A stretch of DNA of 63,825 nt, the filler included, from Octopus bimaculoides (lineage: Eukaryota): NCBI RefSeq assembly GCF_001194135.2. It is 4 parts of 4 records of this genome, joined end to end, with 100 filler letters (N's around TTAATTAATTAA, not from the genome) between each part and the next. Parts side by side here need not be neighbours in the genome. Positions count along the whole stretch, not along the records: positions 1 to 11,322 come from NC_068983.1; 3 more parts are not named here. One strand, written 5' to 3'. Positions within the stretch are counted from its first letter, which is position 1; the number at the start of each line of letters is the position of its first letter. Positions 8,729 through 9,342 of the stretch are shown here, one piece after another. The position numbers were made by a program, and so were the translations under genes. The notes under the pieces are model-generated. The model saw only the letters and a list, made by a program, of their open reading frames with translations, did no database searches and was not told the DNA's origin.

Positions 8729-9342
8729 CTTCACAAACTTAAGGACACAGTAATTGTGTCAAGGCCGACAGGAAGCGGTCCAGCTTCCTAGGGCTAAACA
8801 GCAGTAGTGGNNNNNNNNNNNNNNNNNNNNNNNNNNNNNNNNNNNNNNNNNNNNNNNNNNNNNNNNNNNNNNNNNNNNNNNNNNNNNNNNNNNNNNNNNN
8901 NNNNNNNNNNNNNNNNNNNNNNNNNNNNNNNNNNNNCAGTAGTGTATTCCCTTATTGGGATTGTCACATTAAGTTGACAATATACTACAACTTTGTCGCT
9001 CCACTACTGCTTAAATCTCTCTGAGAGATTTAGAAATATTATATTTCTAATTTTGCTGATCAGTGAATGAACTTCACTATGATTTACATAAGTTTGTGAA
9101 GGAGAAACAGGCTTCTTTATCTAGCTGGAAAGCTACTTCAGGCTGATGACGAGCAAAGACTCAGAAACATGTCCCTGAATGCTGGCTAGGCTGGGTGGGG
9201 AAGCTTGTCTCCCCTTCACAAACTTTAAGACACAATAATTGTGTCAAGGCCGACAGGAAGCGGTCCAGCTTCCTAGGGCTAAACAGCAGTAGTGGATTCC
9301 CTTATTGAGATTGTCACATTAAGTTGACAATATACTAGAACT
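8729..9342 (+). mobile_element. Retrozyme-like element: 350-nt non-coding unit with hammerhead and terminal redundancy
   Basis: 8937-8992 repeats at 9287-9342 (period 350) and 8729-8810 repeats at 9214-9295; no ORF; many perfect hairpins; hammerhead at 9137-9179. Confidence 0.75.
9137..9179 (+). ncRNA. Type I hammerhead ribozyme
   Basis: TTCAGG-CTGATGA-C-GAG(CAAAGA)CTC-A-GAAAC-AT-GTC/CCTGAA: 6-bp stem I, intact CUGANGA and GAAA core, GUC site after 9173; C.A mismatch at the base of stem II. Confidence 0.85.

What the first reader, a model, noticed from the sequence alone, without database searches (positions are those of the whole stretch)
8729..9342. Retrozyme-like circular-RNA retroelement: 350-nt unit, circularly permuted, almost fully base-paired
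Seen: a non-coding unit with an exact 350-nt period and about 130 nt of terminal redundancy (about 6 differences by hand count). The hammerhead sits in the middle, so the genomic copy is circularly permuted relative to the cleavage site. Joined as a circle, the unit pairs extensively: 9090-9116 with 9199-9225 (AAGTTTGTGAAGG/CCTTCACAAACTT rod leading into the ribozyme); AGCAGTAGTGGA 9285-96 with TCCACTACTGCT 9000-11 (works only across the unit junction); plus hairpins GACACAA-TAA-TTGTGTC, AGGAAGC-GGTCCA-GCTTCCT, ATTGTCA..TGACAAT, TAAATCTCT-CTG-AGAGATTTA, TTAGAAAT-ATTAT-ATTTCTAA and AGTGAA-TGAAC-TTCACT. One copy difference (G.U vs A-U) is structure-neutral. Known: metazoan non-LTR retrozymes are short tandem units with type I hammerheads that yield circRNAs. 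Inference: this copy came from rolling reverse transcription of a viroid-like circle by a borrowed RT. Whether an octopus family has been described cannot be checked here.
Basis: partly seen in the sequence, partly recalled or inferred. Interest (0 to 1): 0.9.

Follow-up and report, generated by a model that had tools for sequence, protein, structure and literature searches.

The report
Decayed hammerhead retrozyme copy, octopus-like genome
This is a non-coding 350-base repeat, present as a little more than one head-to-tail copy, that carries one slightly damaged self-cutting hammerhead RNA motif and folds very tightly. It is most likely an old, inactive insertion of the already known animal "retrozyme" type of small mobile element, so it is an ordinary if neat example.

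Summary
A 350-nt non-coding unit is present as more than one head-to-tail copy. 408 contiguous bases (8937-9344) already contain 1.17 units, and 1.38 units follow if the gap is collapsed. The two contig ends at the 126-N gap land on the same nine unit positions (8 identical, 1 mismatch). The gap is therefore either spurious or hides whole extra units.

A type-I hammerhead motif sits at 9137-9179, with cleavage after 9173:
- My descriptor finds it once in the window and once in 300 shuffles.
- Rfam aligns it end to end to Hammerhead_HH9, but at only 22.7 bits against a threshold of 52.
- It has a C·A mismatch at the base of helix II and a minimal, palindromic helix III.

The monomer folds at -135 kcal/mol (z about -10, 70% paired). 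The unit has no ORF and 41% GC, there is no PLE coding remnant in the piece, and the 3' end abuts (TA)n.

Best reading: a decayed, dead-end copy of a metazoan non-LTR retrozyme (a PLE-dependent, HHR-bearing non-autonomous retroelement) in an octopus-like genome. The locus has one hammerhead only, so it cannot release a circle by itself.

Not testable here: whether the template was a circle or an uncleaved multimer, the copy number, and expression. It is a new member of a known kind, of modest interest.

The parts
8717..8810 (+). 5' partial unit. It covers unit positions about 30/40-122, counted from the hammerhead cleavage site. The 5' junction with unrelated flank lies at about 8717-8728.
   Evidence: 80/83 identical to 9213-9295. 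The gapped extension reaches 8717. Upstream 8603-8727 is unrelated to the unit.
8811..8936 (.). Assembly gap (126 N). The contig ends on both sides overlap by 9 unit positions, so the gap is either spurious or hides whole 350-nt units.
8937..9173 (+). Rest of the first unit up to the cleavage site (unit positions 114-350). It contains the multi-hairpin domain and the 5' half of the rod.
9090..9225 (+). Long imperfect rod formed by extending hammerhead helix I, with the ribozyme at its tip.
   Evidence: fold of 9086-9230: -66.7 kcal/mol, z = -7.2
9137..9179 (+). Type-I hammerhead motif. Helix I is 9137-9142 paired with 9174-9179. CUGAUGA is 9143-9149. Helix II and loop 2 are 9150-9163 (CGAG-CAAAGA-CUCA, with C9150·A9163 mismatched). 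GAAA is 9164-9167. Helix III is C-AU-G at 9168-9171. The predicted cleavage is after C9173.
   Evidence: descriptor scan; Rfam HH9 alignment at 22.7 bits
9174..9344 (+). Second partial unit (unit positions 1-171). It ends at the 3' junction.
   Evidence: 55/58 identical to 8937-8994 at offset 350
9000..9011 (+). 3' strand of the 12-bp helix UCCACUACUGCU. It pairs with AGCAGUAGUGGA at 9285-9296 (and with 8799-8810) and closes the hairpin domain.
   Evidence: MFE structure
9344..9374 (.). (TA)n microsatellite directly abutting the 3' end. It is the kind of AT-rich target that PLE endonucleases prefer.
   Evidence: TRF; PMC8557442 and PMC11167929 for the target preference

Best explanation
The locus is one old, probably inactive genomic insertion of a small non-autonomous, non-coding retroelement of the metazoan 'non-LTR retrozyme' type. 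[quoted passage not shown] The host genome is octopus-like.

Inferred life cycle, taken from what is known of the family:
1. Master loci with tandem units are transcribed as multimers.
2. The type-I hammerhead cuts after GUC. Here it would probably work as a dimer of two neighbouring ribozymes, because helix III is only 2 bp with a palindromic ACAUGU.
3. This releases 350-nt monomers with 5'-OH and 2',3'-cyclic phosphate ends.
4. A host RNA ligase closes the monomers into a highly paired circle.
5. A PLE reverse transcriptase/GIY-YIG endonuclease nicks AT-rich DNA and copies the RNA by target-primed reverse transcription.

In this copy, reverse transcription started inside the unit (position about 171) at a (TA)n tract. 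It ran across the intact cleavage/ligation junction and stopped, or was truncated, at position about 30-40 of the next round. The result is 1.38 units, or more if the gap hides units.

What is shown here: the repeat and its register across the gap, the hammerhead motif and its defects, the exceptional fold, the absence of coding capacity, and the (TA)n junction.

What is inferred: RNA cleavage, circularisation, the identity of the reverse transcriptase, and whether the template was a circle or an uncleaved multimer. With one hammerhead, and that one mismatched, this locus is most likely a dead-end 'offspring' copy.
For: - Tandem unit in register across the gap, with 1.17 units in contiguous sequence.
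- Full type-I hammerhead descriptor: 1 hit in the window, 1 hit in 300 shuffles, 0 hits in 43.6 kb of other cephalopod-like DNA.
- Rfam aligns the whole Hammerhead_HH9 model, with a matching 6-bp helix I, an outer helix, a UAC bulge and a CAAAGA loop 2.
- Monomer MFE z = -10.4 (circular) and -11.6 (linear), 70% paired. The rest of the piece has a median z of -0.9.
- The hammerhead is on the + strand only.
- GC is 41.4%. The longest stop-to-stop frame is 74 codons and has no homologue.
- No PLE or other RT domain is found next to the element.
- The 3' end abuts (TA)n.
- Literature: non-LTR retrozymes are tandem units of 170-400 nt, below 45% GC, highly self-paired and carrying type-I HHRs, in molluscs among others (PMC7229834). 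Weak, palindromic helix III makes the ribozyme work as a dimer (PMC4209133). PLEs prefer (TA)n or AT-rich targets and initiate internally (PMC8557442, PMC11167929). Retrozymes are related to PLE pLTRs (bioRxiv 10.64898/2026.07.22.740005). Octopus genomes carry PLE families (PMC13282606).
- The window shares SINE-like repeats and a LINE tail with Octopus bimaculoides.
Against: - The Rfam score is far below the gathering threshold (22.7 against 52), and it appears only when a 76-nt slice is searched.
- There is a C·A mismatch at the normally G-C 10.1/11.1 pair.
- The locus has only one hammerhead and fewer than two units.
- No second family member could be found anywhere. There is none elsewhere in the window, no protein-space trace, no exact-pattern hit in metagenome, viral or prokaryote collections, and none in 43.6 kb of fetched cephalopod-like loci. 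None of those collections holds octopus genomes in searchable DNA form, so this absence says little.
- The fold is almost as strong on the minus strand (z = -9). A simple trinucleotide palindrome in the same piece reaches z = -8.9, so the fold alone is not specific.
- No target-site duplication can be called, because both flanks are microsatellite.
Confidence: 0.68

Rival explanations
1. The element is the same kind, but no circle was involved. The copy was reverse-transcribed from an uncleaved, linear multimeric transcript of a tandem master array. Initiation was internal and the 5' end was truncated, as shown in vitro for the PLE Poseidon_Ac.
For: The cleavage junction is intact in the copy, and both ends lie inside the unit rather than at the cleavage site. 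[quoted passage not shown] The two overlapping partial copies differ at 6 of 132 positions. Copying a heterogeneous array explains that without any later mutation.
Against: For canonical type-I HHR repeats, circRNAs are the abundant species in coral, mussel and axolotl (PMC7229834). The 4.5% divergence is equally explained by age, and CpG is depleted to 4 observed against 15 expected. DNA sequence alone cannot separate the two routes.
Confidence: 0.3
2. The unit is part of a larger element whose remainder lies outside this piece or in its gaps. Examples are the pseudo-LTR of an autonomous PLE or the end of another transposon.
For: PLE pLTRs carry hammerheads and form partial tandems that break short-read assemblies (PMC8557442, PMC4209133). 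The piece has four N gaps.
Against: The repeat period is 350 nt with the unit's end joined directly to its start, which leaves no room for an ORF between copies. 120 PLE RT-EN proteins give no tblastn hit anywhere in the 11.3-kb piece, and Pfam finds nothing. Both flanks are microsatellite. The hammerhead has the canonical 6-bp helix I and 4-position helix II, not the PLE minimal form with long helix II and short helix I (PMC4209133).
Confidence: 0.1
3. The locus is a DNA-level tandem duplication or minisatellite, or a foldback-type repeat, and the hammerhead-like string is fortuitous or a relic without any RNA role.
For: There is a single locus, fewer than two units and a sub-threshold Rfam score. 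Both strands fold about equally well, with only 9 G·U pairs among 123. At about 0.003 descriptor hits per 11 kb, a 2-3 Gb genome would hold hundreds of chance hits.
Against: A chance motif would not be expected to sit exactly at the tip of a rod of about 50 bp that continues its helix I, inside a tandem unit of the right size and GC. It would also not be expected to carry a loop 2 and a UAC bulge that align to the HH9 consensus.
Confidence: 0.1
4. The redundancy is an assembly artefact: duplicated contig ends or haplotigs around the gap.
For: A gap lies inside the feature and the contig ends overlap by 9 nt.
Against: The 58-nt repeat at offset 350 lies within one uninterrupted contig (8937-9344). 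The left contig has its own junction to unrelated flank, so it is not an allele of 9175-9295.
Confidence: 0.03

Closest known systems
Metazoan non-LTR retrozymes (Cervera & de la Peña 2020, PMC7229834; review PMC7761336)
   Same: Non-coding head-to-tail unit within the 170-400 nt range. GC below 45% (41.4% here). Type-I hammerhead with a 6-bp helix I, a 4-position helix II and a weak palindromic helix III. Highly self-paired, branched monomer. No LTR, PBS, PPT or ORF. The host phylum (Mollusca) is already known to carry them.
   Different: Only 1.17-1.38 units and one ribozyme are visible here. There is a C·A mismatch at 10.1/11.1. No family, array or circRNA could be shown. No cephalopod example was found in the searchable literature.
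Pseudo-LTRs of Penelope-like elements with minimal hammerheads (PMC4209133, PMC8557442, PMC11167929)
   Same: Hammerhead of type-I topology with a dimer-type palindromic helix III. Partial-tandem insertion longer than one unit. 3' end at an AT-rich (TA)n site. Ends internal to the unit, which is compatible with internal initiation.
   Different: No RT/GIY-YIG ORF in the piece. The period is 350 nt instead of about 3 kb. Helix I and helix II have canonical sizes rather than the PLE minimal form (helix II 6-8 bp, helix I 2-5 bp).
Rfam Hammerhead_HH9 / Hammerhead_1 (clan CL00010)
   Same: The whole 77-position HH9 model aligns: core, helix I, outer helix and loop 2.
   Different: The score is 22.7 bits against a gathering score of 52. 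Helix III is shortened to 2 bp plus a 2-nt loop, and the first helix II pair is non-standard. HH9 itself is a single-copy, amniote-conserved motif and not a repeat.
Amphibian satellite 2 / axolotl Rtz_331/353 and Schistosoma Sm-alpha repeats
   Same: Repeats of about 330-350 nt with type-I hammerheads that are active mainly as dimers (PMC7229834; Sm-alpha from my own knowledge).
   Different: Those occur in thousands to more than 100,000 copies and in long arrays. Here only one short locus could be examined.
Plant LTR retrozymes and viroid-like circRNAs (Avsunviroidae, satellites)
   Same: A small, highly structured RNA with a hammerhead, and a circular intermediate is proposed.
   Different: Plant retrozymes have type-III HHRs within LTRs plus PBS and PPT. 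Viroid-like RNAs are not DNA-encoded and usually carry ribozymes in both polarities, whereas here the ribozyme is on one strand only and the sequence is genomic DNA.

Membership tests
Metazoan non-LTR retrozyme | Type-I hammerhead with the conserved catalytic core and a GUH cleavage site | tested here: met
   CUGAUGA, GAAA, A15.1-U16.1 and GUC|C are all present, with a 6-bp helix I. Caveats: C·A at 10.1/11.1, and the Rfam score is below threshold.
Metazoan non-LTR retrozyme | Head-to-tail tandem array of 150-450-bp units with at least two ribozymes | tested here: inconclusive
   The period is 350 nt. 1.17 units are contiguous and 1.38 follow if the gap is collapsed. Only one hammerhead is visible, and the gap may hide further units.
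Metazoan non-LTR retrozyme | No ORF, LTR, PBS or PPT; GC below 45% | tested here: met
   The longest frame is 74 codons and has no homologue. GC is 41.4%.
Metazoan non-LTR retrozyme | Monomer RNA highly self-paired | tested here: met
   MFE -135 kcal/mol, z = -10.4, 70% paired. It is an outlier against the rest of the piece.
Metazoan non-LTR retrozyme | Multi-copy family dispersed in the genome | not testable with these tools
   No searchable octopus genome DNA is available. Indirect attempts found nothing.
Metazoan non-LTR retrozyme | Expressed as a unit-length circRNA | not testable with these tools
   This needs RNA-seq junction reads, RNase R treatment or a northern blot.
Metazoan non-LTR retrozyme | Autonomous PLEs co-occur in the host genome | not tested
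   There is none in the window. The literature reports PLE families in Octopus (PMC13282606, PMC8557442). The host is inferred to be octopus-like.
Autonomous Penelope-like element (pLTR) | RT plus GIY-YIG ORF between the direct repeats | tested here: not met
   120 PLE proteins give no tblastn hit in the piece. There are no Pfam domains. The 350-nt period leaves no room for an ORF.
Autonomous Penelope-like element (pLTR) | Minimal HHR: long helix II (6-8 bp), short helix I, no helix III | tested here: not met
   Helix I is 6 bp, helix II has 4 positions and helix III is 2 bp plus a 2-nt loop, which is the canonical-type architecture described in PMC4209133.
Rfam hammerhead clan CL00010 | Reaches a family gathering score | tested here: not met
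   HH9 scores 22.7 bits against 52. There is no hit in the 11-kb or 409-nt searches.
Viroid-like replicating circRNA | Ribozymes in both polarities; RNA-only existence | tested here: not met
   The hammerhead is on the + strand only. The sequence is embedded in genomic DNA between microsatellites.
Plant-type LTR retrozyme | Type-III HHRs in LTRs, with PBS and PPT | tested here: not met
   The topology is type I, with helix I open and helices II and III closed. There are no LTRs.

The most novel reading that the evidence does not exclude
This may be one decayed copy of a still undescribed, cephalopod-specific family of circRNA-forming retrozymes that remains active elsewhere in the genome. Its 350-nt RNA is about 70% double-stranded, and cephalopods edit double-stranded RNA on a massive scale. 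The circles could therefore be major ADAR substrates, and the three positions where one partial copy has G and the other A could be footprints of edited templates fixed by reverse transcription.
Probability: 0.06. Interest if true: 0.6.

Novelty: new member of a known kind. Interest (0 to 1): 0.3.

Why it matters
If genome-wide searches confirm it, this locus would extend hammerhead-bearing circRNA retroelements to cephalopods. They are already known from cnidarians, bivalves, rotifers, insects and amphibians. It would also give a concrete 350-nt query for finding the family, its master arrays and its PLE partner in octopus genomes. On its own it is a single degenerate copy of a known kind of element. 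It changes no concept and opens no long-standing question. It also shows why short-read assemblies break inside such repeats.

Tried and rejected
1. Rfam on the whole piece and on 409 nt found no ribozyme. Every listed miRNA hit lies on microsatellite or trinucleotide palindromes and was dismissed.
2. Exact look-up of two window ORFs found nothing on record.
3. A protein-space search with the 74-codon conceptual frame of the unit, meant to catch spurious ORF calls on paralogues, found no candidate.
4. Exact-pattern scans found nothing. I used two patterns: the hammerhead with a free helix II, and a 24-mer from the hairpin domain. I scanned metagenome contigs twice, viral contigs twice and prokaryote genomes once. 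These collections are not expected to hold octopus DNA.
5. I searched with the Poseidon_Ac PLE protein to reach octopus PLE loci and compare their pLTRs. It gave 5,663 hits, but none of the 120 listed was from a cephalopod, so the route was closed.
6. I fetched 43.6 kb of O. bimaculoides and cephalopod-like loci through LINE homologues. They contain no copy of the unit and no hammerhead.
7. I tested whether the upstream 8603-8727, which contains the same 9-mer AAACATGTC as the ribozyme, is a diverged unit. Its alignment score equals that of shuffles, so I rejected the idea.
8. I tested for a long target-site duplication of (TA)n plus GAGTGTGTCTG. Other microsatellite stretches of the piece give the same scores, so I rejected it.
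9. Pfam on eight ORFs of the piece found nothing. ARAGORN found no tRNA-like head.
10. Co-folding two ribozyme segments favours the dimer only marginally (-39.0 against 2 x -18.1 kcal/mol), so I did not use it as evidence.

Full report
**The gap**

The finding spans an assembly gap of 126 N (8811-8936). The left contig ends ...AACAGCAGTAGTGG at 8810. The right contig begins CAGTAGTGTATTCCC at 8937. Against the complete downstream copy, 8728-8810 aligns to 9213-9295 at offset 485 (80/83 identical). 8937-8994 aligns to 9287-9344 at offset 350 (55/58 identical).

Both contig ends therefore map onto the same nine unit positions (9287-9295), with eight identical bases and a G/T conflict at the last. 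485 = 350 + 126 + 9. The letters on the two sides are in register with a single 350-nt period. The gap is either spurious (a true length of about -9, as expected when a short-read assembler forks inside a repeat) or hides n x 350 - 9 nt, that is whole extra units. The estimate of 126 fits neither exactly.

Independently of the gap, the right contig alone (8937-9344, 408 uninterrupted bases) contains 1.17 units. The tandem arrangement is therefore not an artefact of scaffolding. The left contig has its own junction to unrelated sequence, so it is not a haplotig of the downstream copy.

**The repeat**

With the gap collapsed, the element runs from about 8717/8728 to 9344. That is 482-493 nt, or 1.38 units, with 132 nt present twice and six differences between the two versions. 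One of the six is the unreliable contig-end base. No other copy exists in the 11.3-kb piece. The flanks on both sides are TA/TG-type microsatellite. The 3' end abuts (TA)n at 9344-9374. No target-site duplication can be called, because similarity between the two flanks is no higher than between any two microsatellite stretches of the piece.

**The hammerhead**

On the + strand, 9137-9179 reads UUCAGG-CUGAUGA-CGAG-CAAAGA-CUCA-GAAA-C-AU-G-UC|CCUGAA.
- Helix I has 6 bp (9137-9142 paired with 9174-9179).
- A UAC/U internal loop and further pairs follow helix I.
- The core nucleotides, the A15.1-U16.1 pair and the GUC cleavage triplet are all present.

The bare core pattern is not significant (1 match; 47 of 200 shuffles also contain one). 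A full type-I descriptor requires the core, a helix II of at least 3 bp, a helix III or palindrome, UH and a helix I of at least 5 bp. It hits once in the window, once in 300 shuffled windows on both strands, and never in 43.6 kb of other cephalopod-like DNA.

Rfam gave no ribozyme hit on the whole piece or on 409 nt. On a 76-nt slice, where the filters are laxer, it aligns the complete Hammerhead_HH9 model (RF02275) at 22.7 bits. The E-value is 4.8e-4 for that slice, roughly 0.07 if scaled to the whole piece. The score is well below the gathering score of 52. That alignment matches helix I, the outer helix, the bulge and loop 2 (CAAAGA against the consensus CAAAAA). It flags two defects:
- The first helix II pair is C·A instead of the usual G-C.
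- Helix III is reduced to two pairs closed by a 2-nt loop, which makes ACAUGU a palindrome.

A short palindromic helix III is the published hallmark of metazoan type-I hammerheads that cleave as dimers of neighbouring ribozymes (PMC4209133, PMC7229834). The C·A mismatch is one transition away from a pair. CUCG to CUCA is a CpG decay, and the unit has 4 CpG against 15 expected. I read this as a decayed copy. Without paralogues that remains an inference.

**The fold**

The 350-nt monomer, permuted to start at the cleavage site, has a circular MFE of -135.0 kcal/mol against -82.1 +/- 5.1 for dinucleotide shuffles (z = -10.4). The linear form gives z = -11.6. About 70% of the bases are paired.

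- the rod 9090-9116 with 9199-9225, which continues helix I (arm alone z = -7.2);
- the 12-bp helix AGCAGUAGUGGA/UCCACUACUGCU;
- six small hairpins.

Non-overlapping 350-nt windows tiled along the rest of the piece (N-containing windows skipped) have z between +1.6 and -2.9. The only exception is an (ACC)n/(GGT)n palindrome at about 10.85 kb (z = -8.9). The unit is therefore a clear outlier, but a strong fold alone is not specific. The minus strand folds nearly as well (z = -9.0; 9 G·U pairs on either strand). Strandedness rests on the hammerhead, which occurs on the + strand only.

Of the six copy differences, three are structure-neutral in the + RNA: two lie in a 3-nt linker and one changes A-U to G·U. 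The others weaken small hairpins or the end of the 12-bp helix. Two sequences cannot give meaningful covariation. 'Almost fully base-paired' is an overstatement, because the structure is branched and 70% paired.

**Surroundings and host**

No ORF in or near the unit has meaning. The longest stop-to-stop frame of a tandem unit is 74 codons and has no relative among 5.8 billion proteins. Eight larger ORFs of the piece have no Pfam domain. 120 PLE RT/GIY-YIG proteins give no tblastn hit in the piece.

The only coding remnant is a LINE 3' tail at 3903-4552. Its best named relatives are Octopus bimaculoides proteins (76% and 66% identity). The piece also shares SINE-like repeats at 76-84% identity with an O. 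bimaculoides chromosome segment.

**What it is**

The features match the published definition of metazoan non-LTR retrozymes:
- a tandem unit within 170-400 nt;
- GC of 41.4%, below the 45% limit;
- a type-I hammerhead with canonical helix sizes;
- a highly paired monomer;
- no LTR, PBS, PPT or ORF.

These elements are described from a coral, a mussel, an axolotl and other invertebrates (PMC7229834, PMC7761336). A 2026 preprint argues that they are non-autonomous derivatives of PLE pseudo-LTRs (10.64898/2026.07.22.740005). PLEs insert preferentially at (TA)n or AT-rich sites and form partial tandems that break assemblies (PMC8557442, PMC11167929). The 3' junction here fits that. Octopus genomes carry PLE families (PMC13282606).

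**What cannot be said**

- The copy crosses the cleavage junction intact, and both its ends lie inside the unit (positions about 30-40 and 171). This requires a template with an intact junction. Such a template can be a ligated circle, as in the retrozyme model. It can equally be an uncleaved multimeric transcript copied with internal initiation, which is what was seen in vitro for Poseidon_Ac, where hammerhead mutations did not affect insertion (PMC11167929). DNA alone does not separate these routes.
- The locus holds a single hammerhead. Unless the gap hides units, its transcript would be cut once and could not release a monomer. With a dimer-type helix III, one ribozyme would in any case be poorly active. 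It is best seen as a dead-end offspring copy.
- If the two partial copies were identical at insertion, their 4.5% divergence suggests an age of a few million years, using the octopus TE calibration in PMC13282606. That rests on six differences and is very rough.
They could not be tested, because none of the DNA collections available here holds octopus genomes. All indirect attempts came back empty.

**Novelty**

No paper in the searchable library combines 'hammerhead ribozyme' with 'Octopus bimaculoides'. The retrozyme papers do not mention cephalopods. The giant squid genome paper lists 235 Rfam hammerhead_1 hits without further analysis (PMC6962438). This locus is therefore a probable first look at a cephalopod member of a known kind, and not a new kind. 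Interest is modest (0.3). It would rise somewhat if the family proves abundant, active and circular in octopus.

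Noticed in passing
window 3903-4552 (+): 3' tail of a non-LTR (LINE) retrotransposon ORF with a frameshift near 4364/4388. Its best named relatives are Octopus bimaculoides XP_014788340 (76% identity) and LOC106878562 (66%). 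One homologue carries zf-RVT (PF13966).
   Followed up: partly
window 6569-6774, 7377-7582 and 605-763: SINE-like dispersed repeat of about 200 nt. Two copies lie 807-808 nt apart at 82-88% identity. It is also found at 76-81% identity in O. bimaculoides chromosome CM046628.1 (L001 3222-3415 and 18472-18690). ARAGORN finds no tRNA-like head.
   Followed up: partly
window 6774-6918 and 6181-6284 (opposite strands): Another short dispersed repeat, matching L001 4401-4559 at 78-84% identity.
   Followed up: no
window 1881-1931 and 5490-5540: A 51-nt direct repeat at 92% identity, 3.6 kb apart (CCAGTGCAAACGTAGCGCAC...). It is probably part of a further repeat family.
   Followed up: no
window 10804-11049: An (ACC/ACT)n run facing a (GGT/AGT)n run forms a long imperfect palindrome (MFE z = -8.9). 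It produces spurious Rfam microRNA hits (MIR7526, MIR834) with E-values down to 3e-12. All other miRNA hits in the piece lie on TA/TG microsatellites.
   Followed up: yes
window 764-1154, 7598-7978, 10005-10546: The other three assembly gaps are all flanked by microsatellite: (AC)n on both sides of 7598-7978 and (TA)n on both sides of 10005-10546. The assembly breaks at simple repeats throughout.
   Followed up: no
window 8677-8685: The 9-mer AAACATGTC, identical to the ribozyme's GAAAC-AU-GUC segment, occurs 42 nt upstream of the element's 5' junction. That is nearly the same distance as in the unit (39 nt). The surrounding 125 nt show no significant similarity to the unit, so I treat it as chance. 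A very old neighbouring copy is not excluded.
   Followed up: yes
window 1422-1769 (-): A 116-codon open frame ends ...CPHLEYSCPLWSLYAKQSIKT, which resembles the region downstream of the RT domain in LINE ORF2 proteins. There is no Pfam hit, and the resemblance is from memory only.
   Followed up: partly
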